This document shows, one piece after another, positions 1 to 19,759 of a stretch of 64,000 nt of DNA. The stretch comes from Iphione sp. A-MEVVRFRX5 (Eukaryota). Numbering within the stretch: position 1 is the stretch's first letter; each line of letters opens with the position of its first letter. A program made the position numbers and the translations under genes. The notes below the pieces were generated by a model. It worked only from the letters and a program-made list of their open reading frames with translations, was not told the origin of the DNA and searched no databases. The stretch lies in contig OZ320315.1 of NCBI GenBank assembly GCA_976226885.1, positions 35,774,001 through 35,838,000 on the forward strand, read 5' to 3'.

Positions 1-2
1 AG

Positions 3-3000
3 GCAAGCCCTCTCCACTATGCTGCGGAGAACGGCCATGCTGCTGTGTGCCGGCTTCTGCTCGATGCTTTTCCGATAGGCCTTCTTAAGATACGGGACCA
101 GAACAACCAAACGGCTCTCTGTCGTGCTCTCATCAGGAAACGATATGATGTTCTGACAGAGTTACTAGCAAATGCGCACAGCTCACTTATATCTGATTCA
201 GTGGGGATTCTGGAAACCTACGCTGATCAAGATATCCTGTGCATTGCACGTCAGAATGGCACAGATCTTTTGTTTAGCTCACCAGAGAGGGCACTCCACC
301 TGTTTCATATTGCGCTTGTCAGTGGAGACGTCAGTTTGATGGTGACATCTGTCAAGCTATTAGAGAGAAGCTCACCTAAGTACATCAATGCACGTGATGA
401 ACTGGGCTGGACATTATTGCACCATGCCATTACTCACGGGGCCACGAAAATAGTAACAATGCTCTGTGAGGAGGGAGCAAATACCTTGCTCCGAGACCAC
501 CAAGGCCTCACGCCCTTGGCTCTGGCCTGCCAACAGGGGCTTATAGAGGTGGTATCAGTTTTGCCATTGGAGAAGGAGAATAACAAGGCCATATGCAAGG
601 CCATCCGTAGGGCTATTTTTTATGGGAAAATCGATATTGTTGAGCATCTACTCTCGCGGGTTGCACAAGAATTCACCCTGGATGAGCAGACATGGCAAAT
701 GATTTCTTGTGCCCTACAGAAGAACTTCCAGTCGTCAAAGAAGCTACTTGTCGTCTGCCCGGCACAGGATCCCAAAGGTGTCGTCCTGAACCGGTTCCTT
801 CTTGAAGCTGCACGTGATGGTGATGAGGAGACTGTCAAAGTGCTGCTCAGCAAAGTGGCTGTAGACATCAACTTCTGTGATTACCTCGGCCAGTCCGCTC
901 TCCACGAGGCAGCTGCTGCAGGACACGTACCGATAGTAAGGATGCTGGCCCGACATTCCGAAGCAGACGTGAACATGCAGAACTGGCGGGGCGAGACCGC
1001 TCTCCACTATGCCAGCAAGCATGGCCACGGTGAAGCGGTTAGCGAGCTTCTACAGGTGGACGCTGTAGATGTACTCCTCGTCGATGAATCTGGCCAGACG
1101 GCAGCGTTGAAGGCTCTCTACTGTGGCCACGCACGACTCACCGGGTGCTTCATGCAAGAAGAACGTCACCTGCGTAGCTTGTTTGTGCAGGACAACTTCC
1201 AAATGAACGTTCTGCATTATGCTTCCGATATTGACGCGGACACATTCCAGGAGTTGATCAGTACGGCAGATATAAGCGAACCTGTGTCACTGCTGAAAGA
1301 TAGCGAGAAGTGGTCGTCAGTGGAGCCCCAGGCTCAAATGGATGACATATATCGGAGTTCTTTGTTTGATGGGGAAGTCCTCCCTCGTAAAGTGCCTGCC
1401 AGACTGGCTGCAATTTTTGAGCGAAGAACAGCAAAAGAACCGTGTGAGAGATGCGAGAAATCTCTCTGTGTCTCTAGATTTTGTTTAAATTCTGTTCAGT
1501 GGCACTATGGAGAAGCCTGTTGGCATGAACAGCAATTACGGAGGTTCAACCAGCCAAAAGATGCAAACAAGGAAAGATCCAAACCCCCTAAAGCTTGTAA
1601 GAAAGGAACCCCATTTGAGTGTCACGGGCTGTTACATTCAAGGAAGGAAGGAACATGTGATCATCCTCTGCATGTCGCTGTGAAGCGGAATAGACCAGAC
1701 CTTTTGCCCTCACTGGCTAGAAACACCGATGACCTGCATGCGCAAGACTCACAGCATCGATGCCCCCTGGAACTGTCCGTTAACTTACTGTCTTTAGATT
1801 GCACGGGTGCCCTAGTGGAGATTCACAAGAGACAAAGCTGCAAGGATCTGTATGAGCTTATACCAAAGCTCATTATCAGGTGCCTGGAGGCAAAACCATT
1901 TGGAAGATCTGATGCAGATGAGAGAGAACGAGTGCTGCAAAAGCTCCTTGCCTGCTATGAACGAGATGACCAACTGATTGATGTCACCAGTGATGGCATC
2001 TCGAGGCCCTGCCCTCTAGTTCATGCCTGTTCGCTAGGGTTGACTGGGTGTGTCTCCATTCTCCTCCGCTGCGAGCCCAACGGGAAGTACTTCACAGCGT
2101 TGCTAGCTGCTGTGAAGGCGGGGCACGTGGACGTTGTGGACTGCATTATGACTGCGTTGGAGAACCACCCAGACGGCCAAGGTCTCCTCCATCACTTAGG
2201 TAGCATACGAGATGCCGATGGCTACAGCCTGCTAGCAGTTGCAGTGCAGGCCAAGGGGCTGCACGGTCCTCGGGTTGTAAGAAGGATCATAGAGCGATGT
2301 CCTCTCATTGTGGATTTCCCCATGATGCACGAGACGCGCTCCACCTCACAGACATTCCTGTGCTCTGGTGGTGTCGATACGGCAACGCTGACCAGCTGGC
2401 GTGGCAACACTTTGCTGGAGAAGCTCATGGAGCAGCACTACAGTGGTCTGGTCGAGCGCGATGCATGGGAAGCAGCCGGCTGCTTCCTCATAGAACATGG
2501 CATTGCGGACGGGATCGTGCAGGGTCCTCAAAACCGCATAGTGCATGCCAGCTGTGCAGCCCTCCTTTCTGCTGTCCAGCATGGCTTCTGGCAGATTGCC
2601 GAGGCGTTGGTGGCATGCGGTGCCGCAGAGCAAGCCTGGCGCTGTACTTTTGGCGAGCCCACCGGCTCCAGCTGCAAACAGCGACTGGGACTCATGCTGG
2701 ATGGGATTGTCTTTCGCCTTCTCCAGCCCGACACACCCGACGGGCTGCTGCTGAAGTTTTTGCGGGCCGGCCTCAAGCTGCAGGCGTCTGGGGCGATATC
2801 AATGGGAGAATTGGAGGCTGAGCAGACGCGAATGCTTTGGGAGGCGAAAACCAGTCACCGACGTATTTTCGAGGAAACCAGTACCTCGCTGATTTTGAAG
2901 GTGCCCTTCTCCTTCAAGGCGTTTACACCCGTTGAGCACGTGGTCATGCAGGCCATACAGCCCATAATAGGCTGGAAACAACCCGTCACGAGGCGCTTTT

Positions 3001-4017
3001 CTACGTGGAATCCGTTCACTCTGAAAGCACCGAAGAAAAGGAAGGATAGGAAACTGCGAATGGGCACAAAACAAACGCCGCCCAACGTCCGGCAGGCGGA
3101 CGCTGCGACGCCGATGTCACCCATGGCCGGTACAGCAGCGGTTCCTGGACAGTTGGTATCCCCAGCCCAGCCCTCCCAAAACACACCACGCATGGCGTTC
3201 ACCTCCACAAACCGGCAGCTGTTTACCTTGTCACCGCGGTCCTGCCGCCTGGCGGCCAGGGTGAGGCGGCGCTGGAAGAACAAGATGGAGAGAACCGTTC
3301 CCAGCGTCTTCTACTTGCCGAGCCCCGCCGAGCAGTCGCCCAAGTTTCAACGTCTGGGGAGCCCCGTGTCACCCGTTGTGCTCAGTCCAACTGAGTCCCT
3401 GGAGACTTACATCGTCACCTACGCCGTGCCTGGAGGTGGGGAGGGAGCAGCCAACAGCTCGTCGTCCGTCAAGGCCGTGCACACGCCGGTTTACATATCG
3501 GACTACACACCGCACACTCCCAGCAAGCTCAACAAATTCTTCATTCGCCGCCCGTTGAACGGCCGAATGATGCAGTCGCTGGCCACCATCCTTCAACTGC
3601 TCCCCGGGCTCGGTCACACCATCACTGCCTGCTTCAAGGATGCCAAAATCGATCCGATCCTGGGCGTTGTGCCTCGTCGCATACTGAACAACGGGGCCCT
3701 GGCTCGCAAGTTCCGCATCGACAAAGCGACCCTCCAGCTCGCCTTCCGAGGCGGGATCCACGAGCCCCCGGTCTTCCTCCAGGCCTGCCGGCAGGGTCAC
3801 ATGGAGGTGCTCCAGACCATCGTGAAGACCGCCGGCGCGGACGCCGTCGCCGGTATACGATTCAGGGCGTCCGTTGACCCGAGGAAGCGAAACGCGGAGA
3901 GAGTCTACCTGACGGGGATAGGAGCCGCCGCCTCCCGAGGTCACCTCCCGGCGGTCGAATGGCTGCTGGACCAAGGTCTTCAACCGACGTGGGCCGATAT
4001 CAGAGCTTTCCTGACGG
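3..4017 (+). CDS. E3 ligase exon: ankyrin-repeat array plus Pro/Ser/basic linker
   Basis: Repeated ankyrin motifs (GWTLLHHAITHG, GLTPLALACQQG, GQSALHEAAAAGH, GETALHYASKHGH, LTGIGAAASRGH). Donor GTACGT at 4018, so the last 26 codons of the ORF-track entry are intron. Confidence 0.9.
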
Positions 4018-7000
4018 GTACGTATCTGTTGATGACCCAACATTTTTTTAGAAAGGCAGTTCACTTTATCGAAGGTTTTAGGCTGATTACAGATTAGAGC
4101 CTTGCAGATGATGTTAGCGTAATTGATGACATCACGGTCATTCTTATACCATACCAAGCACCAATATAATAGCGAGCTTGAATGGCAATCAGCATCTGCC
4201 ATGATGTAGGGAATTTGTTGAGATGATTGATAGAACATGTACACCCTTACGTAGCTTTATCAGGATTCATTTTATGATTAATTTCATAATTGAGATTTTT
4301 ATTGACATTTCCTTTCATTAAATCGCCTTTGTTTTCATATTTCTGTTAGCATCAGACTCCGTCCCTTGGGCTCTCCTTGAAAGGCTTCTCAGCAGGTGAG
4401 CGATCTCGATTATAGAATAATATTTACTCCAAAATTGTATTTTCAAAAATAACTCATGTTCTGCTCTTAGTACCAATAAGATCAAAGTATGTCCGTAGAT
4501 ATGAAAAACTGACAGTAGACTTACTTTATTGACAGCACGTTAACTGAGGAAAGAGGACCGTCTTGTAGAAAAGAAATAATGAGAACTCCAGAAAATGGAA
4601 TATTTCTTCAGTAGAATAGCCTTGTTGAGTGGACTGTACTGTTATTTGAACTGACACCTGATAGGAATTATCCTCGTTTACCCTTCCATAGCGTGGTCGC
4701 CCTCAATGGTGACTTGCCTCATCAGACGTCAGTACTCTGTGCAGCCTCTAGCCATGGCATGACTTGTGCAGTTAGGTGGATTCTTGCTAGATATCCACAC
4801 CTACAGGAGCACGCGGTCTTGACGTAAGTTTTTTTAAAGCCATGTCTCAAGTGATGTGTTGACCTAACCAGTAGACAAGAGACTCGCTTCTAGAGCAACC
4901 CACTCAAGGAAGAGATACATGTATACTTGTACTTACCCTTAACATAATATTTTATATTTAGACCTTAGAATATAGCAAATCTACCAGTTCGACACTCCCG
5001 AATTATTCACTCTGATATCTTCGGTAGCCCTACATCCCACTAATCCATCCCCTGAAAGTCTTCAGCCATGCCAACACACATGGCATTTGTACTAATATAA
5101 ATGGACAGATCACTCGTCTCAGATACAAAAGGAAGAAGGGCACTACAATCATACCACGGATTTTGATGCCCTTTGCTCCAAGTAGAGTACTTTTCTTTTT
5201 TTTTTTTTTTTTTTACTTTTTTGTTTACTAAAGTGGCTACATGAACTAAACCTTGTCCAGTAATTAAACAGAGTTTTAATTAAATTTAATAAAAACACCA
5301 AAAGTATAGGCCTGATGAGCTCTGATGAGCGAAACCCTGTTAATAAATATTTTTAAATCTTTTGATTGAACAAAATATTATTATAATAAGACCTCCAAAT
5401 ACCTGATTCCCCCATGGACTATATGCCATGATGGAGGGATCAAAGAGAGACAAGGCAGATTCATGGGCAGGAGGCATGGCAACTGCATTCCATTTGCCAC
5501 AACAGGGTACCTTTGGTGAGGTAACAACTCCATCTCTCGTTTCCAGTTAGAGTACCTTTCTTTCTGTGCCTGGCAGCATGAGTGATCACACTTTTGTAAA
5601 GTTTACAATTTACATATCAAGTCAATCAGGCCTTTCAGATGAAGGGACCAAAACATCTAATACCGGGCTTAGTTGCATATTCTGAGTTCCATTGTTCTTT
5701 GGACATAACTTTCTTTGAATTCCCCCTAGAATTTTCGCATGGAGGGCCACATCTCTAGCATGACAGCCTCCGTATGATTATACATGCAGTTTACAAAAAT
5801 AACTCGGTCGACTTTGTTGCACAGATTTCTGCATATTGGATAATAATATGAAAAATTTATATTCTGAATTAAGGGTACCTTCTTTGATACTGTCAGACAT
5901 TCAGAGAGGCATTACTTTTGAACGATTTGAACCACAGGCCTCCATTGGAGTCCTAAACTGATCTAAATTCCAAATGTTCCGCTGCCTTTCATCTGTCAGC
6001 TTGACCAGGAATAATTATGGATATAATTTTGTCGTTAATATTGGCATACTTCAGCCTTTGATCGATTCATGTCTTTCTTCATCCTGAATTCTAAGCTTGT
6101 AAACATGTTTTATGATCCAAACCTCGCTGCTATATGGTAGAAATCAGAATTCTGGTCGACTACAAAGTGGAAAAGGCCTGAAGTACAGAGAGTAAATGGC
6201 AGTGCAGAAAAATGTTTCCGTTATAAATTTGTGATCACTGTGCAGACATGACCTGTGTTCTTGTAGTTGTAATCAAAGTGCAGCTATGAGCTGTATACCG
6301 GATACTTCTAGTGACAATGTCTGCCCAGAATGTGACTTTCTGCTGTATGTTGCTGGGTTGTCACTCTATGTGATTTAAGGTTGATGTCAGCAATGATGTC
6401 TATCCTTTCAGGAATGCCTTCTCAGCTGCCATCAGCCACGGTCATAGTGAAGCATCAGAGGTGCTTTTCGATTTCCTCCGAGATACTGACGGTGAGATCA
6501 GTCTGATGCCATCAATGTTAGTACTGGCCTGCCAGAATAACCTGTGGCATTTAGCAAGCATGCTGCTCGATCATATCTCCTTAGAACATCTCACGGACGT
6601 AGACAAAGATGGCAGGACTGTCCTTCACTATGCTGCACGGGAAGGCAAGGTGGATTTCCTGGAGAGCTTGATCTCTCACCTGGAGCAGCTCACTGAAGCA
6701 AGTCACAAGATCCCCGAGTTCCTCAATCTCCGAGATGTCAGAGACAGGACTGCCTTTTGGTATGCATGCAGGGAGCGGGAGCTCCTTATGGCAGAGGCTT
6801 TAATTCTGTTTGGAGCAAACGTAGCTGATGGAGCAAGATCGCTGCAAATAACCCCGAGTAAATCCGGTTCAAGAGGATGGGAAATGTACGGCAGTTCACA
6901 GATGGCCTCTGCTATGAACCAGGAGCTCGCAGTAGTGACGGAAAGTCTGGATCAACCCATCCATCTGAAGCTCAAAACTTTGATTGGATGTTCCGTACGG

Positions 7001-10000
7001 GCGCATGCAAGAAAAATTCCTCTTCTGCAAATGGCATGTTGTGATGGACTCGAAGAAATTGTCAAGTTGATCATCTCGCGAAGAGCACACATAGTCAGGG
7101 ATTCTGCCCAGATGGTGCAGTGTTTGTGCTATGCCCTCCTCAATGGACACGTTAGGCTTGTTCAGTATCTTCTCCAGCAAGGAGCGCTGGTTGACAAGAC
7201 TGCACTGGTCCGGGCGTGGCTGTTGCGAACAGCCAATGTTGTCAGTGGTTTCGAAGTTCGGTTCCCTGGACAATGCTCCGAGCATCATGTTATCAACACC
7301 AAAGGCCAGAACGACATGGCTCAATCTCTCCCCCATGGACTTCAAGTCACCATCCTCACGAGCATGAAGAAAGAGCTGAAAACTTTATGGCAAGAATGGA
7401 CGCCATTCTGTAGACCCTTCGAGAATGAAACCAAAACTACCTCCTGTACAGATGAATGGCTATTCCTGTTGGACAGTTTTATGTCAAAGGGTGACATTAG
7501 CACCTCACAAGCTACCTCTTATGCCATTCTTCTTGCCGTAATTGGTCAACCAGAGGTCACTGAACGAGTCATCCGTTGCTGGCCACAAGTACTTACAGCT
7601 CCGGCATTGACACCTGAATGGCCCACACTTTGGCGGCGGTACACTGTCCTCGAAGGACCCCTCGAAAACTACAGGCCAACGCTCTTGGATATGATTTTGG
7701 CTTATCAGACCGCTGATAAGGTGCGTGGTTGTGTAGAAGCAATGGGAAGAGTTCTGCCCAGTCTGACTTGGAATTCTGTCCAGGTTCTGATCGCCTGCCA
7801 GAGACAAATGGCTGTCATTCCGATTCAGGTACTACTACTCCCACCCTCCTGCCTGACCCATGGCAATCTTCCATTTACATTCAGAGTACTGTGCAGCCTT
7901 CTCAGTCATGCATCAGATAGCCACTTTGAGGATACCATGAGAGAGCTCAGCTCACAGCAGTCGGTGACAGCAGAAAGTCCAGATGCACACAACCGTCTGC
8001 TGACTCTGCTGCTGCATTTTGCTGTTCGGAGAAGGGACATCAACAAGACTCGTGTCCTTGTAGCACTAGGAGCCAATGGATGCCGACGGCTTGAGAATGA
8101 CGACATCACGCTCATTGGGCTGGGCATAAAACGGTTGAAATGGCTGCCACCCAGTAAGCAGAGCTGGAGTGCCTTACATCAGGCTTGTTCAGTCGGGTGC
8201 TTGGAAAGTTTCAAGCTATGTTTAGCTCAGCTTTCACCCATTGAGAACATTGCTGTCGAGAAGCTGGACAGTCAGTTCTGCTGGGATCTTGGTCAGATTG
8301 CGGCATCATGTGGCCAGCTCCAAGTGCTACAGTGGCTCAGCAGTGAGGGCGTTCTGTCATGGGCACACAGTTCACAGGTTAGTCGAGGAGACAACATTTG
8401 GCCTCACCTTTTGAAGTTTGCCGCGGAGAACGGTCACCTGGCAGTGGTCCAGTGGCTGGTTGATCAACAGCAGTACGAAGGGAAAACTCCCGAAAACCAC
8501 CCAGCAAGGACGAACGTGTACCATCACCTGGCCACAGCTCAAGACGAGCTGCTTGCAGTGGAGATTATCAACACGCTGCTAGCGTCAGACATTCCCGGGA
8601 TCAGCAGACCAGACTCCGCAGGTTTCACTCCCGCCACGTATGCCTATTGCTTTGGGAATGTGAAGACGTTCATGCACTTGATAGAACGAGAGGTCGACCT
8701 CGGCAGCGTGGACGTCTATGTGGGCCAACTGGCCAGATGCTATGGTGCGATGCGGCACAGTCAAGACCCACTCGGCAGAAAATACATGGAACCAGGGCAC
8801 GGAAAGGGCCTCTTTGATGTGGTTAGACCTGCTGACCATGCAGACAATGCAGTCCAGATGAGAGATGTTAAGCCATTTACTACCCTGGTGCAGTGCTTGA
8901 AGAAAGGAGCCGACCAACTTGCAGTGTGGATGATGATGTCTGCTGCACCAGCCCTCAAGAGAAGTCTTCGGGAGAGCGACAACGGTGAGGCTTTCATGGG
9001 GCTAGCAAAAACGGCATGCAAGTATGGATGCTCACAGAGTTTGAATGTTCTCTTGTGTTTCCTCAAGAATGAGACCAAATCTGCAGCACTCCTGGAAACA
9101 GAGCTGGGACAGGCTCTATCAACTGCAGTTGCACGATGTCAAATAGCGTGCGTTGAAGCTTTTGAGCATCATGGTACTCTAGATCTGAACACTTTCGTCA
9201 GCCCAACAACAGGAGAGAACATCATCCATCTTGCCTTGAAAACGATGAACAAGGGTGTAGTGGCAAAGGTAATCAGCATGCTTGGAAATGCTGCCAAGGT
9301 AGCGAAACAGCCTAACACGGATGGTCTGACAGCAGTAGATTATGCTCGGTCTTTGGATGGAATGAATGATGTGCTGGCTGCCTGTCTGGGTTCGCCAGTC
9401 CTCTCCAAACCCCAGGCAGCCAAGCAGTCTCTACCCGAGCGCCTTGTCAGCCCCAGTGCCGCCCAGAAACGATCCCTGATGCGCGATGTCACAAGGTGCA
9501 GTGTCGACAAGACCTTCGAGATCTGCCAGCTCTGTTGGACGGGCCAAGTCACTGGCCCAGCTCTCATCGCAACTGAAGTGCTTCACTACACACTTGCCAA
9601 GGCCGAGCTAGACGAAGTTCGGCAACTCTTCCGTCGTTTTACCGAAGAGGGCCTGCTCCAACAAACGGTAGATACATCGCTGTATGGGTACACTTTGGCA
9701 GAAACTGCATGGGTATTCGGGAAGGTCAAGACTGCCATCTGGCTGACGCAGGAGTTTCCTACCATGGGCCTCTCAACTGAAGGTAACCTGGCATCTCTCT
9801 GGCAGCAATGGAGTCGCTACAAGCACATCGTCTCGAGTCTGGACCAGCCAGCAGCATTGGAGGGACTCCTTGCTGTTTGCCCCGAGGACTATGCAGGCAG
9901 TATGTTATCGCTGGTGCAAAGAGAACAACTTCCAGAGGCCGACGACTTTGTGAACGTCCCAGAGGAGGTCCAGGGGTCCTATGGCTGTAGTCCAGAGCTG

Positions 10001-13000
10001 TCTGCAGTGAAAGAGCGCATTAAACATCGCACCATTCCTTCCCTGAATGACATGGTGAGTGAAGTCATTTCTGTTATTTAGCTAGCAATTTAGCAATATC
10101 AGAACTTCCAAGGTCTCTGGCATTGAACTACATGCAGTCTGTATTTGTTACTACTGCATGAATATGCAATAACTTTCGTGATTTAATCGAGTGTAATGTA
10201 AGAAAATATGTGAAGATGTGGAGGGTTCACAATATCTTTGGAGAGAGTTTAAGTGTTTTCTTCAGTTTTGGAAATATTTTCTACTTTATTTAAACTGTAT
10301 AATTCGTTGCTCTCATTTCTCTTTTAGTTGAAGAAAATCCTGGGCCTAAAGAACATTGATGTGGAAATGGACTGGGATTCATTCGTGCTAGAATCAGGAG
10401 AGGAACCTGCTCTGGAATTACTGGATGTCTTTCACCACTTCGGTGGTGTTGAATTTGCCGGCCTTGGCCCAACCATCCACAGCTGTGGACTTTACCAACG
10501 GACGGCGCAACGATTTGGTAGGATACCAGAGTGTACCGATAACCTACAAACCCTACTGATCCGGTTTGATGGTGTGCAAACGATGAAAGAGCTGGCGAAG
10601 AAGGAGGAAAATGATACAAATCCACACCAGTCTGTGGCCGTTTGGGCTTTCAGCCTTGAAAACGGGCGAGTCTTGTATGACCCAAGCTGCCTGCCCTTCT
10701 GGTGGATGCATCGATGGATGTTCCTGGCAGTTCTTTCGTGGGAGTCGCCACTGAAAAAAGTTCAGAAATCAGCAGCAGCAGCAACCTCCAGTCGTTGTCC
10801 GAAGCGTGTCAGTGTCAGGATCGACTGGGATAGTTTAGTTTCCAGCGTGGTGTTAAGGAAGTCAGAGATAGGAGAACTCATCACAGGACCCATAGCAGAT
10901 GAAATCAACCGTTTCGCACGAATGTTCTGTGCGCGATCGGAGCGTATCGAGGCATCATTCTCACAGTTTGACATTTCTTTCACCAAAGCAGGAGAAGCTT
11001 GCCAGTTCAACATCTGTGATGACACTCTGTATATCCAAGTTTCTGTCCTTGGAGGTGGAGAGGAAAAATTAAGAGTTGAGATACCTGCTGTAGAGGAAAC
11101 GCTCTCCAGAATGATGATGGAGAAAGTCCAGTGTGGTTGGTCTCTGAAAGAACCTATTGAACTGTGTGTAGATGTTCAGACCACTGATCTAAGTCATGGG
11201 AGGATAAGGATAGAACTAAAGGATGCTACGGTCATGCAGTGGATATCAGAGAGAGGACTTCTCGACTTGGAGTCACCAGTGAAGATCGCGACCAAATTGG
11301 TACACAAGGTGAAAAAGGACTTAGGCTTGTGGGCCAAGTCTGCCATATTGCGGAGCTATGCTGCTATCAATGCTGGGGTTTATGTCTGTCCCTCAACTTG
11401 GCCATCACAGAGAATACTAACAGTCGTCAGTGTCGAAGGACGCAAGTACCGCATCATTGATGATGAATTCCTCAGTGCTCTCCAGGATGCGATTCCTCCG
11501 GACGTTAGGTTCTTCTGTCCGCCAGATGACTCTGCTCCAGCTGCTGCTTCTCATGTAGTCTCGACAGCCCTCCCTTCGGCTATCAGCTGTACGAACACCA
11601 TTTACCTGGGTGACCTCAGGGTAGTGACCACTTGGAGCCAGACTCACAGTGGCTGCCATGATATTCCCCACCTCATCCAGGAAGATGTGAATGCACAGGG
11701 GAAGGAAATGATCTTAATTGGTATCGGTAGATATCTGAAATCAATGCTTCCCACCTTAGACGAGTCACACATCGAGCAGATCGTAAATGCACTACGCCAC
11801 CAAATAAGTCACCCAATTGTGAAGAAGGACATTCGCAACATCCACCAACTCATTGAAATGGTTCATAGGGCTTTGGGCTTCCTTAGCAGAACCACAGCCT
11901 CGCATGAATTCGGGAATAGGTCTTCAGAAGAATTACTTTCTGTCCTCCAGTCACTTTTGATGAAATCTTCCAGGAAACCGCTCCATGAGCAGTTCATAAA
12001 CCTAGTGAGGCAGCTGAGCAGCTCGCCAGAGGAGCTCAGTGGCTACCCATGCCCTGCCATGTGCACAATACCAGCACAATACAGGCATGTCATTCATTTC
12101 CCAGTGGCAAGTGAAGCAGGCAACGGAGTTGCTAATGAAGAAGTGATGCTTAAAATCCAACTAAATGACGCCAACGGCCAGAGCATTGAGTCTTGCGAGG
12201 AGACTGACCTCAAAGTTGATCTTAGACTGAATGTAAAGCGTCCAAAGTACCGATGCATAAAATTGACGTCAAAAGCCTCAGTCATTAAGGACACTGATGG
12301 CTTCAGTCTTAATGTAAGTTGGAACAAGGAAGACATTAATACTGCTACCAAGAAGCTGAGCAAACAACACAGCTCCTGCATGGCGGTGATGATCAACGGT
12401 TGTCACATACAAGACAGTCCCTTCCCGGTTTTCTTCCATAGAACTCTTGGCAGAACCGTTGGGCTTGGAGGAGAGGAGTTTTTCAAGACACCAACTGCCA
12501 AGCCATTGCAAGTGCTCCTTATGCGTAACTGCAAATGCAGCCCATCAAGTTTGAAATCTTGGGATAGAAGAAGCAACCAGCAAAGAATTGTGCCAAGCGC
12601 TTCCCGGGCTTTGCCTGCCATTTATAAGTGGCGCCAGCTAGTGGCTGGAGGGTGGAAACAAGTGTGGAGTCTTGGTGGGGTCTGCGGCCTAGCCACCAAG
12701 CCAGTGACCTGCGCAACGACCTCACTGCCCACAGCAGGTCTCCTGTCTTTGGCTGTGACATCCAGGGTGGTAGGGGAATTGCACCTCCAGGCCTACTGCA
12801 TGACCTGCCTACAGCCCCTCCAGTTCCTGGTACCGGACGCCGCACCACGCAGTGAGCTGCTCATCATGGTAACCCCCGGTGAGCCGAGTCCAACCAGCTC
12901 TTATGTGGTGGATAAAAACTTGCAGAGTAAGTGTTTCTTTTCCGAGGTTGCTCTGGATAGTTCAGGATCTATGAATTGTCTTGAATTTCACTTGAAACAC

Positions 13001-16000
13001 TTTCATGTGATTGGTGTCTTTATTGGGCTGTATGTCGTACGATCTACAATAGTTATCAAAATCGTATTCATTTCACTATGTGATTGCTGATGACCAGCTT
13101 TTATGGGGTCTAATCTCTGAAGGGTTTGTCATGACATATATTCCTATGTTTAAACATATCCCATATATTGGAATTATTTGATTTTATCTATATTGTTAAC
13201 TGCCATAGTTTATAATCAAATCAGTCAGTTTTGTATAAGAAAAACACATGGGTTTCAAGACTCTACATATGTATATATGTGTGTTTTTCAGCTATGCCCA
13301 GAAGAGAGGGAGTCACCTGGTGCCGCACTGCAGGCGAATGCTTCACTTGCCTGTTTTGCATCAGAGACCGTGGCATTTGGATGCATGTTGAGGGGGTCTC
13401 TCACCTGCCTGACTTTTCGCTCAATCTTGTGGGAGGCTTTTCCAAAGTGGAACTCGGCTGCTCAGTGGTGAATGCGGCCGATGGTCTGTGGCGGCTCACA
13501 AGCCCACCTCTGACTGCTGCTGGCACGTATGAGCTGTGTATGGGGGAGAGACCTGTCAGGAATGGGGCCCTTGGGTACACTGTCCTCGTACTTGCCGCGG
13601 AGCCAGACCCTGGCTTCTGCTATGCCCATGGCGAGGGACTGTCCACTGTGTACTCAGCAGTGCCTGCCCAATTCAAAATTACCCTCCACGACCGCTACGA
13701 CAATGACATCCAACCCTCTAGGAAGATGATACTTTATCACCAAGATGTCCGTATTGTGCTGGTGTCAGGAACTCCGTGTGAGAGCCTCGATGTAGTACCC
13801 TCACTGAAGATCTCCGACTCGGACATAATTTGTTCTTACAAGGTGCCTTCCGAATTCCGTGGAAGGCTGAAAATTTCAGTGAGTACCATTTGAAATAAGA
13901 TGGAATAACTACCTTCACCACCTAAAAGATTATGAATTATTTCATGCATTTCCGTCGCGTATACAAGTCATGTCTATGTCCTCAATAAGAATGTGGAATA
14001 TAGGTTGTCTTAGTAACCATTTAGTTAGTTGTAACCATTCCATTAAACCAAACAAGGATGACAAAACGTCAAAACTCTCTTTATTGTCCCCCGCCTCATA
14101 GAGGGGGGGACATTAGGAATGCTGCCAGCTGGTGTCCCGACCATCCGTCACACTCTTGTGGGTCTTATAAGTGTTAAACCCTTCACTCAAAAAAACTGAT
14201 TTTAATATATGATATTGGTATATATGGCCCCATGGCACTGGGTAATTTTGGTAGTAATTCAAATAGTTTGAAGGTGAAATTATGGCAATTTTACTCTTTT
14301 CCTAACACACCTACAAACATACATACCTGGTTCAGGGGTTCCTAGGTCTGACAATGCACATACATACACACTCAGTGCTCAGTCATGCAGAACCGAGGGT
14401 TTGTAGCAGTCTGGTGCTCAGTGAGGCAGAACCGAGGTGGCTGTGCCCGGTCAGGCAGAACCGAGAGTTGTAAACCTGAAGGACTTAAACAAGTCTAGCC
14501 AACTACCCCCAAAACAAGCTGCCAATCAAGGTGGTTGTNNNNNNNNNNNNNNNNNNNNNNNNNNNNNNNNNNNNNNNNNNNNNNNNNNNNNNNNNNNNNN
14601 NNNNNNNNNNNNNNNNNNNNNNNNNNNNNNNNNNNNNNNNNNNNNNNNNNNNNNNNNNNNNNNNNNNCTCCCCCCCCCCCATCTTTATGGGCAGTTGATG
14701 GCGGGGGACAATAGACCTCACAGGTCCACACTCTTGTTCATTGTTAAATTAGTGACTTAACCATTGGCTTTTATCCCACTCTTTCTACATTGTACAGTGG
14801 TCCCTCCATAACCAACACTTTTAGTTTCTGTAGATTTCGTCAGGTAAATTGAACTTGTCCGACATTTCCAATTGACTTTTCACATTTGGTTCCCCCTGAG
14901 GTTATCGGATAAGCAATCATGCCGGTTATAAGCCCGTCAGTTAAGGGGGGAGATGACTGTATTCAGATTCACTTTAGATGTTCTTTGTCCTTAGTCTATT
15001 CACTTAAAAAGTTCAGTCCTTAACCTATCAATGGACAAAACATGCATTCCAGAAATGACATTCGGTCTCATTTTTGACTAATAGGGTCTCAAGTAGGGAC
15101 GAATGTTAAATGTTTTGCAGAAAAATATAGAGAGCATAACAGGTTTCTTAAAAATTCATCTACTTAGGTTTTCATCCATGGAGTGCATGCGAGGGGCAGT
15201 CCATACACAGCCCGCTGGACATCCTTGAAGAGCTTCAGTCAGCGACACCGAGAACTGCGCCGGGCACTCCAGACTATGAAGCGAGTCAATGGCCATGTTG
15301 ATCTTTGGGTAGGCCGCGATACCATATTGGAAGACACTTTTTACGTCTTCCAACAGATGGCACAGAAGAAAATTCCCATGCTGCATTATTCGACCATCGT
15401 ACACTTCAATGACGAGAAAGGTGTTGATGCTGGCGGCCTCACACGGTATGTACCAGAACTACTTACTTCTCTTCAACTTTGTATACATGTAATTTTTCAA
15501 AAAATAAAAAAGAATATTCGAGACCGATGATTTATTATTGCCAACGCCTCATAGAGAGGCACCAAGTGCCAATCTAGGTGGTTGTAGGGAGAGAGACCCC
15601 CCACCTCCTCCAGCCCTGCAAGCAATCAACCATGAAATGGGTCATTGAGGTGGGGCACACTAGACCTCAAAGGTCCAAGCTCTTGTTTGTGTACAGATTC
15701 ATATCTTATTGCAGCTTGGTCATATTACTCACTCACTTGAGATACTTTAGACAAAAATTATTTTAGATAACACATATGTAGAAAATGGTTAGCATCAAAG
15801 TACAGAAGAGATTTCCATGAAGTAATATGTATCTTTTCTCCTAGGGAGTGGTATCAGCTGCTGTCTCGGGCAATGTTCAATCCAAACTATGTGCTCTTCG
15901 AGGAAGTTGACGGTCGATGCTACAGGCCAAACACCAAATCTTGGGTCCAAGAGAACCACCTTGATCACTTTTACTACTGTGGACAGGTCTTCGCAAAGGC

Positions 16001-17765
16001 TATTGTTGATGGTAACGAAGTCTGTTTTTTGTATATGAAAGGGGGATGAATTCGAATGTGAGTCTGAGCCTGGAGTGTCGGAGTGTGAGTGTAAATATGA
16101 GTCTGAGTGAATTTGGAGTGTTCTGAGTCTGGAGTGTGTGTGTTTAAGTGTGAGTGCGTGCCACAAGGGTAGGTCTCGTGGCAACTTGCAGCATACTTAT
16201 GACTACTTTGACTTAATCTATAATATAATCCTCTTAAGTGCTGATTTTTTCATCAAAAACTATGTCACAGTAGAGCAGACAAATTTTGAAAAATAGAGTA
16301 GACAAATACATGTACAAATCTGTTATCTCCATGTTAGGTATTACCTGTATTCTCAGTCAAATTATAGATTGTGAAGTGCACCCAGTTTTCTGTTATGGTA
16401 GCAATACATTGAACTTTATCAAGAGGTTACGGCCACACCAAGTATTATCAATCAGCTTAGTTAAACACATATCGTCCATGAAATTTATATTGGTTCAGTC
16501 TAGTGGTCAATATTTAGTGCCTTAACATTCAAATGCATCTATATTTCTCATTCATGTTTGTATCTGTAATTCCTATCCTTTGAGTAAGTAGGGGATGCTT
16601 TACAAATCATTCTTAATTTCGTTATTGAGCATAATTACTCAAAGTGGATCTTATTGAGTCCTTCGTTGTTACAAATGGAATAACAACCTTTTTTTGACTT
16701 GTAGGGGATAGTATGGATGTGCATCTTGCCCACTCCGTATATAAAAGTCTGCTGGAACGACCTTTAACGCTGTCGGACTTGGGAAAGGAGGACGCTGTTC
16801 TTCACAAGTAAGTTGATCCCAAACCTGTGTGTGCCTTGTTTCGATCTCACTCGATCGTGAGTCGATCGCCTCGCCAGCAGTCGTAAAAGACCGGTAATAC
16901 TGATGCATTTTTGATCGTTTGTGATGTCATCGTGGGAATTGCCCAATCAAATTGCTTAAAATTGAGATGATGTCACAATTTGGTAAAAATGACATCCGTA
17001 CTACCCGATTATTCAACCTTTGGCGATCGGCTAATTGCCATGAAGGCTTTCTGCCACAGATGTCCTAGTTGAATGCCTCCTTAGCCCAGGGTGTTATATA
17101 CAAACATTGATGTTTTTTGTCTCGTAGGATTATCCGGTTCGACTTCAGTTCGATTTTCCCCGTCTTTTTTTTGTTTAGAAACCTGACCATGCTTAAGGAT
17201 ATGACCACAGAGGATGAGGTGGAAGCCATGTGCCTAACGTTTGCCATTGATGAACCAGCATTTGGAGAGAACCTCTCCGTTCCACTTAAACCTGGAGGTG
17301 CTGATATTGAAGTCACATTAGAAAATCGCTCGGAATATATTCATCTGTACACGACATACGTTCTCAGGGGTAAGCTATTGATCACATAGTTCAGTTCTTG
17401 GAAGGGATAAGGTACTTTTGACATTTGATGTTTGTGACCTTCACAATGGCGGTTGATGGATAGATGCACAAAAAAACAGTACATAGATGACAATGCAACA
17501 GGCACGCACACACACACACACGAATCATGCACACACGCATATACAGAGGAAAAAAGCAAGTGGAGAGAGGCAGGTCTGGCTCACCTGAATGTCAGGGGGG
17601 CGGCAGGGACTCATTGTTTCATTGATCCGTCAGCTTCAGGCAATATACAGGTATAGATGGCGACGCGAGTGACGCCGCATGGTAACGAGATGTATATTTT
17701 GGAACGCTAGGGGCGACAGTGATCATTCAACTTTAAAATTTCCATACATTCATGTAAAAAAAATT

Positions 17766-17805
<40 letters not shown>

Positions 17806-19280
17806 ATATATTGTGAAACGAGGCTAGTCCTCCAAAAGTGGTATCCAAAAAATATGTATGTATATATATACATATATATATATGCGCATCATATCCGTGC
17901 ACATTAAACCATCAATGGAGTGCTTTGTTCCATCGATTATGTTCTTTTACAGAGCGGATAAAGAAGCAGCTCGAGCATCTACACGACGGCTTTGTGTCGG
18001 TCTTACCACAGAAGCTCATATCGGAGTTTAGCCCCACTGAGCTGGAGTTCCTCATATGCGGCCACAGCAGTCTCGATTTGGAGCTGCTCAGGAACCACAC
18101 GACCTACGGTGGGAACTACTCGCCGAAGTCCCGACAGGTCCTCTGGCTGTGGCAGCTCCTGTCATCGTGGAAGCAGGTATGACCGACAGGCGGGAATTCA
18201 TACATGCCGGCAGACAGACAGACAGACAGACATACAGACAGAGGTAGTGGGGACGGAGGGCTGTCAGGGAGGAGACGGGCAAAATTGCATGTCGTCAAGC
18301 TTTCTTTCCGAGACTCAGACAGCGTTAATTATTCCATGACTGTTTTGATTATGTACGTTGAGGACTGTATATACTGGCTGCGCTTTCAGAAAAGATGGGG
18401 AATATATAATAGGCACAGATTGGGTACGTTTATGCAAAAAAATATCTACGACGTGTAAACTATGTGTTTCTAAACACATTTGTCTAAGCTATGTCCACTG
18501 TGTTTCGTGTTAAAATACAATCAACCCAGCTGTAGTATTTTCTTAAAATACCTGCTTAACTAAAAAAAAATAACTCCGTCACAATAACATGGGCAAAAAA
18601 AAAAAAACAAATTAGTGACATTGCTCGGTAGACGAACAAGTACACAGGGCCATTTTTGTACACAGACGTTTCGGAATTGTGAATAATAATATCTTTACAA
18701 AAGACATCTTTTGAATTATCATTTCTACAGGAGAAAAAGGAAAAGTTTCTTCAGTTTGTGACTGGAAACACTCGAATGCCAGCTTGCACACAGGACTGGC
18801 GTCTAACCATAGAATCGGTACCCAGCAAAGGTGAGATTTCTGTCACTTCTTGCTAAAAGAGCCATTAGACGGTTTCTTTTTGAAAAAAGTGTTACATGAC
18901 CACCATGTTCATTAGAAATATCGAACTCGCATATTTTGAAATAACTTCCCGCTTTTGCCCATATGTAAACAAGACAGTTTTATTCACGGATATAAATTAA
19001 AGGGAAAGACAGTATTTTCTCCCGCGTGTGATATCTCGTTTGAAATATAATCGTTGTTAAATATGCTTCAGTTATTATTTATGAAACGGCGATGGTACTG
19101 CGGACTGGGGAAAAACGATAATTATTACCATTCCATCTTTTTTCCTCCTTAGACCAACTTCCCACGGCGAGCACCTGTTTCAACATACTGAAGTTGCCAA
19201 CGTACTCCAGTAAGGCGCTACTCAGGAAGCAAATGACCACTGCGATAGTCATGGGATCACAAGGATTCGGCCAGTTTTAA
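3..19280 (+). CDS. Giant ankyrin-repeat / filamin-repeat / HECT E3 ubiquitin ligase, 5' end outside window (>=4,070 aa)
   Basis: Exons 3-4017, 4350-4395, 4692-4823, 6412-10054, 10328-12926, 13292-13878, 15168-15445, 15845-16011, 16705-16807, 17179-17369, 17953-18176, 18731-18830, 19153-19280. All introns are GT-AG and consecutive phases match (1,2,2,0,1,0,2,1,2,1,0,1), giving one open frame to TAA at 19278-19280. The frame is already open at base 3 (ASPLHYAAENGHAAVC). Confidence 0.9.
4350..4823 (+). CDS. E3 ligase: two small exons (4350-4395, 4692-4823) encoding an ankyrin-like repeat
   Basis: ttctgttag|..agcag|gtgag and ttccatag|..gac|gtaagt. The translation SDSVPWALLERLLS/VVALNGDLPHQTSVLCAASSHGMTCAVRWIL joins the flanking large exons in frame. 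Absent from the ORF track. Confidence 0.8.
5306..5340 (+). ncRNA. Degenerate minimal hammerhead-ribozyme-like motif (Penelope/retrozyme type), probably inactive
   Basis: CTGATGA-GCTC-TGAT-GAGC-GAAAC, with ATAGG/CCTGT able to pair and AATAAA directly after. No convincing stem III or cleavage triplet. Confidence 0.4.
6412..10054 (+). CDS. E3 ligase exon: second ankyrin-repeat array (~1,214 codons)
   Basis: Acceptor tcctttcag at 6411 and donor GTGAGT at 10055. Motifs DGRTVLHYAAREGKVDFL, WSALHQACSVG, LLKFAAENGHLAVVQWLV, GENIIHLAL, DGLTAVDYA. Confidence 0.9.
10328..12926 (+). CDS. E3 ligase exon: unassigned region followed by a degenerate filamin-like repeat
   Basis: Acceptor cttttag at 10327 (phase 0) and donor GTAAGT at 12927. 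Contains MLKIQLNDANGQ...AVMINGCHIQDSPFPV, resembling the start and end strands of a filamin repeat. Confidence 0.8.
13292..15445 (+). CDS. E3 ligase exons 13292-13878 and 15168-15445: filamin/ABP280 repeat and HECT N-terminus
   Basis: EPDPGFCYAHGEGLSTVYSAVPAQFKITLHDRYDN...KIS|VFIHGVHARGSPY is a typical filamin repeat. It is followed by VGRDTILEDTF...HFNDEKGVDAGGLTR, the HECT start. Confidence 0.9.
14084..14738 (+). mobile_element. Non-autonomous Helentron-like element (DINE-1/HINE architecture), copy 1, in E3 ligase intron
   Basis: 5' subTIR TTGTCCCCCGCC with a nearby partial inverted copy, 3' subTIR GGCGGGGGACAA, then hairpin GACCT-CAC-AGGTC and a T-rich end. Near-identical to 19538-19671 + 29762-30221. 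Contains an N gap. Confidence 0.7.
14539..14667. other. Assembly gap
   Basis: Run of N. Confidence 1.
14795..14959. mobile_element. Possible Tc1/mariner-pogo-type MITE
   Basis: TA-CAGTGGTCCCTCC ... GGGGAGATGACTG-TA. The TIRs are imperfect and there are TA dinucleotides on both sides. Confidence 0.35.
15535..15688 (+). mobile_element. Short relative of the HINE-like element
   Basis: Shares cgcctcatagag near the 5' end, ccaatc(t)aggtggttgta internally, and the tagacctca.aggtcca..ctcttgtt hairpin end with copy 1. Confidence 0.55.
15845..19280 (+). CDS. E3 ligase: six exons completing the HECT domain
   Basis: REWYQLLSRAMFNPNYVLF, LKPGGADIEVTLENRSEYI, FSPTELEFLICG, KFLQFVTG, LPTASTCFNILKLP (catalytic Cys TGT at 19176-19178). 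Confidence 0.93.
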
Positions 19281-19721
19281 AGTTGGATGCCTCAATCTGC
19301 GTGTCAAATATCCATGTCACGTTGACCACTTTGTTGACTATGAAGACCATAAACTGACCCATCCGTGGAGGGGGGCTAAAAGACGTCTGCCGCTAGGTAA
19401 TGTACAAAGGTGTCACTGGCACCAGGTATCGCGTGAACATATTTGGCAATGTACCGAGATAGGAAACCACAGACATGGATTTCAACATTGACAGATTGCA
19501 TCATCCTGTGGCCCCTCTCCCATGTGTACATGTATTTTTGTCCCCCGCCTCATAGAGGGGGGGGGACATTAGGAATGCTGCCAGCTGGTGTCCCAACCAT
19601 CCGTCACACTCTTGTGGGTCTTATAAGTCTTAAACCTTTCACTCAAAAAAACTTATTTCAATATATGATATTCACCGATCGCTTCTCGCGAGTTAACCAC
19701 GCCCACCGCGAAACGTCACAG

Positions 19722-19749
19722 ACACGTGCTTCCGGCATAGACAAACAAA
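19722..19749 (+). promoter_or_regulatory. 28-bp subterminal inverted repeat (left), candidate promoter cassette
   Basis: ACACGTGCTTCCGGCATAGACAAACAAA, the exact reverse complement of 29649-29676. Contains an E-box and an ETS-like core, and lies 10 bp before the exonuclease ATG. Confidence 0.55.
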
Positions 19750-19759
19750 CCCATCCAAA

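What the first reader, a model, noticed from the sequence alone, without database searches (positions are those of the whole stretch)
3..19280. A >4,000-aa ankyrin + filamin + HECT E3 ligase hidden as separate ORFs
Seen: four long ORFs and nine small exons splice with matching phases into one frame. It encodes two large ankyrin arrays, two or three filamin/Ig-like repeats and an intact HECT domain with its catalytic Cys. Known: HACE1 has ankyrin + HECT (~900 aa) and AREL1/KIAA0317 has filamin + HECT. I do not know a characterised protein combining all three at this size. Inference: a lineage-specific receptor-ligase, of the kind that often serves innate immunity or substrate surveillance in invertebrates.
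Basis: partly seen in the sequence, partly recalled or inferred. Interest (0 to 1): 0.7.

Follow-up and report, generated by a model that had tools for sequence, protein, structure and literature searches.

The report
Giant ankyrin-filamin-HECT ubiquitin ligase gene
The four long open reading frames and nine small exons do join into one intact gene for a protein-tagging enzyme (a HECT ubiquitin ligase) of about 4,110 residues; the same gene layout is kept in a few other unnamed animal-like genomes, and its architecture fits no characterised HECT family, but what it targets is unknown.

Summary
On the + strand, 13 exons with canonical GT-AG introns and matching phases give 4,070 codons with one stop at 19278-19280. 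Exon 1 opens 122 bases before the window at an acceptor, so the start exon is still missing.

The product has, in order:
- two long, partly degenerate ankyrin arrays;
- a conserved 570-residue module with no detectable relatives;
- about four filamin-type Ig repeats;
- a complete HECT domain with the catalytic Cys and the -4 Phe.

The assembly gap (14539-14667) lies in a dispersed repeat inside intron 6. That intron splits a filamin repeat whose last strand opens exon 7. A homologous locus has no exon there.

No RNA run was listed. Support for one gene is comparative: four loci from three other assemblies keep the exon order and boundaries, and three of them were checked for intron phases, which also match. 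Two copies about 95% identical give dN/dS 0.27.

The HECT exons show no consistent affinity to AREL1, HACE1, NEDD4 or HUWE1. The genome's closest paralogues are more distant than the foreign homologues. It is therefore an old, sparsely sampled family, not a species oddity. An immune role is untested.

The parts
1..4017 (+). Exon 1 (frame from base 3). It opens at an acceptor 122 bases upstream of the window (phase 1). It holds ankyrin array 1, a conserved Cys4 cluster (1443-1484), and a Pro/Ser-rich basic stretch with KKRK (3033-3044).
   Evidence: Open frame with no stop. Ank_2 E 1e-54, and ankyrin hits in all four quarters. Donor GTACGT at 4018. 37% identical to L003/L009 and 28% to L004.
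4350..4395 (+). Exon 2, 46 bases, phase 1 in and phase 2 out. It encodes an ankyrin-type helix.
   Evidence: Best-scoring AG/GT exon of the required length class in intron space. It is needed to link the phases of exons 1 and 3.
4692..4823 (+). Exon 3, 132 bases. It is one ankyrin repeat bridging the arrays of exons 1 and 4.
   Evidence: Similar small ankyrin exons lie at the same place in L003, L004 and L005.
6412..10054 (+). Exon 4, 3,643 bases. This is ankyrin array 2, mostly degenerate repeats.
   Evidence: Ank_2 E 5e-28. Hits at residues 36-140 and 667-765 of the exon. Phase 2 in, phase 0 out.
10328..12040 (+). Exon 5, first 571 residues: a conserved central module of unknown fold.
   Evidence: No Pfam family, no PDB relative and no Atlas hit. 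Only 3 relatives among 1.84 billion representatives. The AlphaFold model is unusable, pLDDT 34.
12041..12926 (+). Exon 5, last 295 residues: two filamin-type Ig-like domains. The first ends in the filamin end motif from 12392.
   Evidence: Pfam Filamin E 0.015. Model pLDDT 67, all-beta. Foldseek top hits are filamin domain pairs, E 5e-4. By VIA-align the top 12 rows are all filamin-type, Z 6.3-7.2.
13292..13878 (+). Exon 6: further filamin-type repeat(s). The last one is cut by intron 6.
   Evidence: Pfam Filamin E 7e-4 to 3e-3, profile positions 2-73/80 of 93. Phase 1 in, phase 0 out.
14539..14667 (.). Assembly gap, inside intron 6 (13879-15167) and inside a copy of a dispersed repeat.
   Evidence: The gap's flanks match a second copy of the repeat 3' of the gene. 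The homologous intron in L003 is about 295 bases and holds no exon.
15168..15445 (+). Exon 7: the last strand of the filamin repeat (first ~17 codons), then the N-terminal extension of the HECT N-lobe.
   Evidence: It starts with the I/V-x-G-x-H-x-x-GSP-F/Y motif, as does L003 at the same place. 52% identical to L003. No paralogue in the own genome.
15845..16011 (+). Exon 8, HECT profile 1-53.
   Evidence: 67% identical to L003.
16705..16807 (+). Exon 9, HECT profile 57-87.
17179..17369 (+). Exon 10, HECT profile 90-151.
   Evidence: E 3e-14. 69% identical to L003. The best own paralogue is 54% over 50 residues.
17953..18176 (+). Exon 11, HECT profile 155-228.
   Evidence: E 7e-18. The best own paralogue is 43%.
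18731..18830 (+). Exon 12, HECT profile 229-261.
19153..19280 (+). Exon 13, HECT profile 267-304, with the catalytic Cys codon at 19176-19178, Phe at -4 from the end, and the stop TAA at 19278-19280.
   Evidence: By the ranges, the Cys falls on HACE1 residue 876, AREL1 chain position 355 (= C790) and E6AP chain position 326 (= C820).

Best explanation
This is one protein-coding gene of at least 14 exons. Thirteen are defined here and the start exon is not found. It encodes a HECT-type E3 ubiquitin ligase of about 4,110 residues. Shown: the exon chain is open and phase-consistent, the HECT domain is complete with its catalytic Cys and the -4 Phe, and the same exon order and boundaries occur in other genomes, with the same intron phases in the three loci where these were checked and under purifying selection. 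Inferred from how HECT ligases work: the C-terminal HECT domain takes ubiquitin from an E2 onto the Cys as a thioester and passes it to lysines of substrates. The non-catalytic 3,700 residues hold those substrates. These are two ankyrin solenoids, a family-specific 570-residue module and about four filamin-type Ig domains that abut the HECT domain directly. The fast-diverging N-terminal part and the well-kept catalytic part fit a conserved enzyme with an evolving binding platform. Substrates and pathway are unknown.
For: Splice sites and phases. HECT tiling 1-304 of 306 and summed score of about 225 bits. Cys alignment: (C790 of AREL1 confirmed as catalytic in PMC12864862). Ankyrin. Ig/filamin fold. 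Homologous loci L003, L004, L005 and L009 carry colinear exons with the same boundaries; L003, L004 and L005 were checked for intron phases and show the same ones. Introns between the large exons are only 273-365 bases here and hold no AATAAA or ATTAAA. dN/dS between L003 and L009 is 0.27 overall: 0.19 for exon 1, 0.28 for exon 4 and 0.34 for exon 5. The gene is single-copy in the genome.
Against: There is no RNA evidence: no run was listed, so the junctions are predicted and not observed. The 5' end is missing. The one ATG-started ORF upstream (L002 8190-8468) does not fit the phase and has no homologue. Filamin matches are below Pfam's cut-off, and the structural Z of about 7 is in the range the tool itself calls middling. 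Catalytic activity and substrate binding are inferred only.
Confidence: 0.78

Rival explanations
1. Two or more neighbouring genes are read together: an ankyrin-repeat gene (exons 1-4) and a separate filamin-HECT ligase gene starting in exon 5. Alternatively, the usual products are shorter transcripts from internal promoters.
For: No RNA run could be obtained. Each large exon is an ORF that gene callers report on its own. A Met lies 14 residues into exon 5.
Against: Intron 4 is 273 bases here and about 190-510 bases in the homologues, with phase 0 kept in all. It has no poly(A) signal. Exon 4 has no in-frame stop before its donor. The same adjacency and order hold in four loci that share no nucleotide similarity outside a HECT exon.
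Confidence: 0.12
2. It is a divergent, N-terminally extended member of the AREL1/KIAA0317 family. That is the only HECT family in which filamin repeats were reported.
For: The filamin-type repeats lie directly before the HECT domain. PMC3673628 states that filamin repeats occur only in the KIAA0317 family.
Against: Exon by exon against solved HECT domains, AREL1 is never the best hit and is absent from two of four lists. Summed bits are about 132 for HUWE1, 123 for HACE1, 114 for ITCH and at most about 94 for AREL1. No membrane segment like AREL1's was found in the 4,070 residues. AREL1 has a roughly 300-residue linker between filamin and HECT, which is lacking here.
Confidence: 0.08
3. It is an unexpressed relic or an assembly artefact that only looks intact.
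For: An assembly gap lies inside the locus. No expression data exist.
Against: There are 4,070 codons without a stop across 13 exons. The gap is in an intronic repeat. Homologues are intact and under purifying selection.
Confidence: 0.02

Closest known systems
AREL1 (KIAA0317), human HECT ligase of 823 residues
   Same: Filamin-type Ig repeat(s) N-terminal to a C-terminal HECT domain. The catalytic Cys lies in the same motif position.
   Different: This protein is five times longer. It has two ankyrin arrays and a 570-residue unknown module. No N-terminal membrane anchor was seen. The last Ig repeat abuts the HECT domain with no disordered linker. The HECT exons score lower against AREL1 than against HUWE1, HACE1 or the NEDD4 group.
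HACE1, ankyrin + HECT ligase of 909 residues
   Same: Ankyrin repeats as the presumed substrate-binding part, followed by HECT. HACE1 is the best solved match for exon 8 (40 bits).
   Different: HACE1 has a single short ankyrin block and no Ig repeats. HACE1 is a weak match for exon 11 (23 bits), so there is no consistent affinity.
HUWE1 / Tom1, giant HECT ligases of 3,300-4,400 residues
   Same: Similar size class, with a large helical-repeat substrate platform ending in a HECT domain. It has the highest summed exon score (about 132 bits).
   Different: The HUWE1 platform is armadillo-like with UBA, WWE and BH3 modules (established knowledge, not tested here). None of these was found, and ankyrin and Ig repeats take their place.
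HECTD1, ankyrin + SUN + MIB/HERC2 + HECT
   Same: A large HECT ligase with ankyrin repeats.
   Different: No Sad1/UNC or MIB-HERC2 domain was detected in any exon.

Membership tests
HECT E3 ubiquitin ligases (Pfam PF00632) | Complete bilobed HECT domain at the C-terminus | tested here: met
   Six consecutive exons match profile positions 1-53, 57-87, 90-151, 155-228, 229-261 and 267-304 of 306. The stop follows directly.
HECT E3 ubiquitin ligases (Pfam PF00632) | Catalytic cysteine in the C-lobe | tested here: met
   Cys at residue 8 of exon 13 (codon 19176-19178). By the ranges it falls on HACE1 C876, AREL1 C790 and E6AP C820.
HECT E3 ubiquitin ligases (Pfam PF00632) | Phe four residues from the C-terminus | tested here: met
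   The protein ends ...GFGQF. The role of the -4 Phe is established knowledge from E6AP and NEDD4-type ligases.
HECT E3 ubiquitin ligases (Pfam PF00632) | Ubiquitin thioester formation and transfer | not testable with these tools
   Needs an in vitro assay.
Filamin/ABP280 repeat (Pfam PF00630) | Sequence match over the family's cut-off | tested here: not met
   16.5 bits (exon 5) and 19-20.9 bits (exon 6) against a cut-off of 26.9.
Filamin/ABP280 repeat (Pfam PF00630) | Ig-like beta-sandwich of the filamin type, ending in the G-x-H-I-x-G-S-P-F strand | tested here: met
   The model is all-beta. Foldseek and VIA-align top matches are filamin domains. The end motif is present in exon 5 and at the start of exon 7, and is conserved in homologues. 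Z of about 7 is only moderate.
AREL1/KIAA0317 family | HECT domain closest to AREL1 | tested here: not met
   AREL1 scores 33.7 and 28.2 bits in two exons and is absent from the lists of two others. HUWE1, HACE1 and the NEDD4 group score higher. This is exon-level scoring, not a tree.
AREL1/KIAA0317 family | N-terminal membrane anchor | tested here: inconclusive
   No convincing hydrophobic segment in the 4,070 residues, but the first exon(s) are unknown.
HACE1 family | HECT domain closest to HACE1, with a short N-terminal ankyrin block | tested here: not met
   HACE1 is best only for exon 8 and weak for exon 11. The ankyrin part here is about 2,600 residues.
Ankyrin repeat proteins (PF12796, PF00023) | Tandem ankyrin repeats over the cut-off | tested here: met
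   Ank_2 scores 183 bits in exon 1 and 98 bits in exon 4. Hits are spread along both exons.

The most novel reading that the evidence does not exclude
This gene and its few homologues found an undescribed family of giant HECT ligases. In it, a 2,600-residue ankyrin platform and a 570-residue module of new fold act together as a multivalent sensor that marks foreign or damaged proteins, comparable in role to the giant surveillance ligases. The family would have been missed so far because gene callers split it into separate ORFs.
Probability: 0.2. Interest if true: 0.65.

Novelty: new variant of a known kind. Interest (0 to 1): 0.42.

Why it matters
HECT ligases are grouped by their N-terminal architectures, and those architectures decide what gets ubiquitinated. 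This gene adds an architecture not listed in the eukaryote-wide survey (PMC3673628): ankyrin arrays, a new central module and filamin-type repeats joined to one HECT domain at over 4,100 residues. The survey reports filamin repeats in one family only. The gene also shows concretely how giant-exon genes are broken into several 'proteins' by ORF-level gene calling. All retrievable relatives were such fragments. The practical value is a clean gene model and a set of homologous loci for anyone who wants to express the HECT domain or trace the family.

Tried and rejected
- Word-index protein searches were blank in all three cases: exon 5, the exon 5 alignment, and the middle of exon 1. These searches only see proteins of similar length.
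- The JGI metagenome scan gave no relative.
- The ESM Atlas gave no usable hit.
- The AlphaFold model of the central module was unusable at pLDDT 34, so it was not searched. A profile search of that module against PDB sequences gave only chance-level hits.
- For RNA, 'none was listed', so read laying could not be used.
- 5' end: the upstream 10 kb has one ATG-started ORF (L002 8190-8513). Its donors give phase 0, not the phase 1 that exon 1 needs, and it has no Pfam or homologue support. It was rejected as the start exon.
- Synteny and taxon of the homologous loci: 10-14 kb downstream of L003 and L005 shares nothing with the window's downstream genes. No repeats are shared at the nucleotide level.
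- Walking upstream from L009 failed, because the recorded gene call reads through two stops.
- Rfam found nothing in 1-20000.
The joined sequence was used only inside scripts for frame, stop and hydropathy bookkeeping. It was sent to no search, fold or family tool, so there is no joined-domain HECT tree and no whole-protein architecture search.
- The gap was not filled, and its letters were not read from the other repeat copy.
Full report

ORF listing shows four long + strand frames:
- 45-4097, open from the window's first bases;
- 6461-10081;
- 10328-13090;
- 13231-13893.

GC content is 0.45-0.62 over the four large coding exons (1, 4, 5 and 6) and 0.38-0.39 where introns fill the bins (4001-6000); the bins over the small HECT exons (15001-19000) are 0.38-0.43, so composition separates coding from non-coding only for the large exons.

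A direct frame test shows that 10054/10328 is phase 0 and 12926/13292 is phase 1, as required.

The stretch 4350-4823 has stops in every frame, so it cannot be one exon. It resolves into a 46-base exon (4350-4395) and a 132-base exon (4692-4823). Their phases (1 to 2, then 2 to 2) link exon 1 to exon 4.

Downstream, seven small exons carry the HECT domain. Joined inside a script, the 13 exons give 12,210 coding bases. That is 4,070 codons, with the only stop at 19278-19280.

**2. The 5' end.**

The window is G000:C4:35774001-35838000. In the 10 kb upstream, exon 1's frame is open for only 198 bases more and holds no Met. A strong acceptor lies 122 bases before the window, in phase 1. The homologue L009 also starts this exon at an acceptor without a Met.

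At least one upstream coding exon therefore exists and was not found. The protein has about 4,112 residues from exon 1 onward.

**3. The assembly gap.**

The gap (14539-14667) lies in intron 6 (13879-15167), far from both splice sites. Exon 6 ends in phase 0 and exon 7 begins in phase 0.

Three observations argue that nothing coding is missing:
- The intron cuts a filamin repeat. Pfam aligns exon 6 to filamin profile positions 2-73/80 of 93. Exon 7 opens with the repeat's closing strand, V-F-I-H-G-V-H-A-R-G-S-P-Y, which runs straight into the HECT N-lobe.
- The homologue L003 has the same break, the same motif (I-Y-F-N-Y-D-H-L-K-G-S-P-F) and an intron of about 295 bases with no exon.
- The gap's flanks belong to a dispersed repeat with a second copy 3' of the gene.

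I did not read or infer the gap's letters. A small phase-0/0 exon specific to this species cannot be formally excluded.

**4. Domains.**

- *Ankyrin.* Ank_2 scores 183 bits in exon 1 and 98 bits in exon 4. Hits lie in all four quarters of exon 1 and in two of four quarters of exon 4. The rest looks like degenerate repeats. Exons 2 and 3 continue the repeat register across the introns.
- *Central module.* The first 571 residues of exon 5 have no Pfam, PDB or Atlas relative. The model was unusable.
- *Filamin-type repeats.* The last 295 residues of exon 5 model as two beta-sandwiches (pLDDT 67). Foldseek's best hits are filamin domain pairs (5dcp, E 5e-4). In the VIA-align second look, the top 12 rows are all filamin-type domains (Z 6.3-7.2, 72-86 aligned residues). 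These Z values are moderate. The argument rests on three things together: sub-threshold Pfam hits, the conserved G-C-H-I-Q-G-S-P-F-P strand and the fold. With exon 6 and the start of exon 7 there are about four Ig-like units.
- *HECT.* Profile positions 1-304 of 306 are tiled colinearly over exons 8-13. Exon 7 supplies the N-terminal extension ending in G-G-L-T joined to R-E-W-Y. By the ranges, the Cys aligns with HACE1 C876, AREL1 C790 (named as catalytic in PMC12864862) and E6AP C820. Phe is present at -4.
- *Membrane segment.* No convincing one was found.

**5. One gene or several?**

No RNA run was listed, so the evidence is comparative.

A full HMMER pass of exon 5 over 1.84 billion representatives found three relatives, all ORF-sized calls. 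Their contigs carry the same series: a large ankyrin ORF, a second ankyrin ORF, the exon-5-like ORF, a roughly 210-230-residue ORF, then HECT pieces. These loci are L003, L004 and L005. L009 is a second copy from the same sample as L003.

tblastn of each window exon shows colinear matches with the same exon boundaries. Exons 7-13 match end to end in L003 and L009.

| Exons | Identity to homologues |
|---|---|
| 1 | 26-37% |
| 4 | 23-29% |
| 5 | 21-27% |
| HECT exons | 50-77% |

In L003, L004 and L005, where I checked them, the intron phases are the same (L009 was not checked): exon 4/5 is phase 0 in all three, exon 5/6 is phase 1 in two, exon 6/7 is phase 0 and exon 7/8 is phase 2.

These loci share no nucleotide similarity with the window apart from one HECT exon, so the shared structure is old.

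L003 and L009 are about 95% identical in exons and introns alike. They give dS 0.07 and dN/dS 0.27 overall, broken down as follows:
- exon 1: 0.19;
- exon 4: 0.28;
- exon 5: 0.34;
- most HECT exons: lower still.

All parts are therefore coding and constrained.

The introns between the large exons are short (273 and 365 bases) and lack poly(A) signals. I put one gene at about 0.8. Shorter alternative transcripts remain possible.

**6. Which HECT family?**

Scores of single exons against solved HECT domains point in different directions:

| Exon | Best solved matches |
|---|---|
| 8 | HACE1, HUWE1 |
| 10 | Rsp5, NEDD4L |
| 11 | NEDD4, HUWE1 |
| 13 | E6AP, HACE1 |

AREL1 is never first and is absent from two of the four lists.

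Within the same genome the gene is single-copy. The best paralogous exons are 43% (exon 11) and 54% over 50 residues (exon 10). The latter lies in a UBE3A-like gene. Exon 7 has no paralogue at all. The foreign homologues score about twice as many bits.

The family is therefore an orthologous lineage of its own within the HECT superfamily. It is not an orthologue of AREL1, HACE1, NEDD4 or HUWE1.

The survey PMC3673628 reports filamin repeats only in the KIAA0317 family and says ankyrin repeats were gained several times. This gene would be a second, independent filamin-HECT combination or a very divergent offshoot.

**7. The organism.**

Earlier notes of this scan disagree: one says 'fish', another 'probably annelid'. 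The genome has no MHC class I exon and only four weak C1-set exons. It is thus probably not a jawed vertebrate. No molluscan haemocyanin domain was found. The taxon is left open, as is the taxon of the homologous contigs.

**8. Function.**

- Shown: an intact, constrained gene for a protein with a complete HECT catalytic domain.
- Inferred: it is an active E3 ligase whose ankyrin, central and Ig parts recruit substrates.
- Not supported by any test: a receptor or innate-immune role.

The N-terminal part diverges fast between distant homologues, but it is under purifying selection between close copies.

**9. Verdict.**

This is a new architectural variant of a known enzyme class. It belongs to a small, previously fragmented family. 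Interest is moderate.

Noticed in passing
window 14081-14740, compared with 19535-19672 and 29762-30223: Intron 6 holds an uninterrupted copy of a dispersed repeat. The second copy, just 3' of the gene, is split by the 10-kb ISL2EU transposon (94-97% identity on the flanks). The intronic copy therefore serves as the 'empty site' for that insertion. The assembly gap falls inside this intronic copy.
   Followed up: partly
window 1443-1484 (exon 1 residues 481-494): A C-x2-C-x5-C-x4-C cluster sits inside the ankyrin array. Its four Cys are conserved in L003 and L004. It may be a small zinc knuckle.
   Followed up: partly
window 3000-3500 (exon 1 residues ~1000-1170): A Pro/Ser-rich, basic stretch of low complexity with a KKRK motif (3033-3044) lies in a region of 62% GC. 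It may be a disordered linker with a nuclear localisation signal. The minus-strand ORF 3369-4244 (291 aa) overlaps this GC-rich region and is probably a by-product of composition.
   Followed up: no
L002 8190-8513 (1.4-1.8 kb upstream of exon 1): An ATG-started 107-residue ORF has two good donors, but both are in phase 0. It has no Pfam family and no homologue. It is not the start exon as it stands, and could be another gene's exon or chance.
   Followed up: partly
L003 and L009 (ENA ERZ25767047, two contigs at 40x): Two copies of the whole gene are about 5% diverged in exons and introns alike, with transposon-sized differences in intron 1-3 space. They are either two haplotypes of a very heterozygous animal or a recent duplication.
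   Followed up: partly
L009 501-4712: The recorded gene call for exon 1 reads through two in-frame stops after the donor. The caller evidently used another genetic code on this eukaryotic contig. This is a caution for ORF-level calls in that collection.
   Followed up: no
G000 as a whole: There is no MHC class I exon, only four weak C1-set exons, and no molluscan haemocyanin domain. Earlier notes of this scan call the same genome 'fish' in one place and 'probably annelid' in another.
   Followed up: partly
G000:C4:67649155-67650670: A HECT domain (profile 2-218) is encoded in one stretch with three in-frame stops, followed by a further piece. It may be a HECT pseudogene or a gene with very short introns, 32 Mb from this locus.
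   Followed up: no
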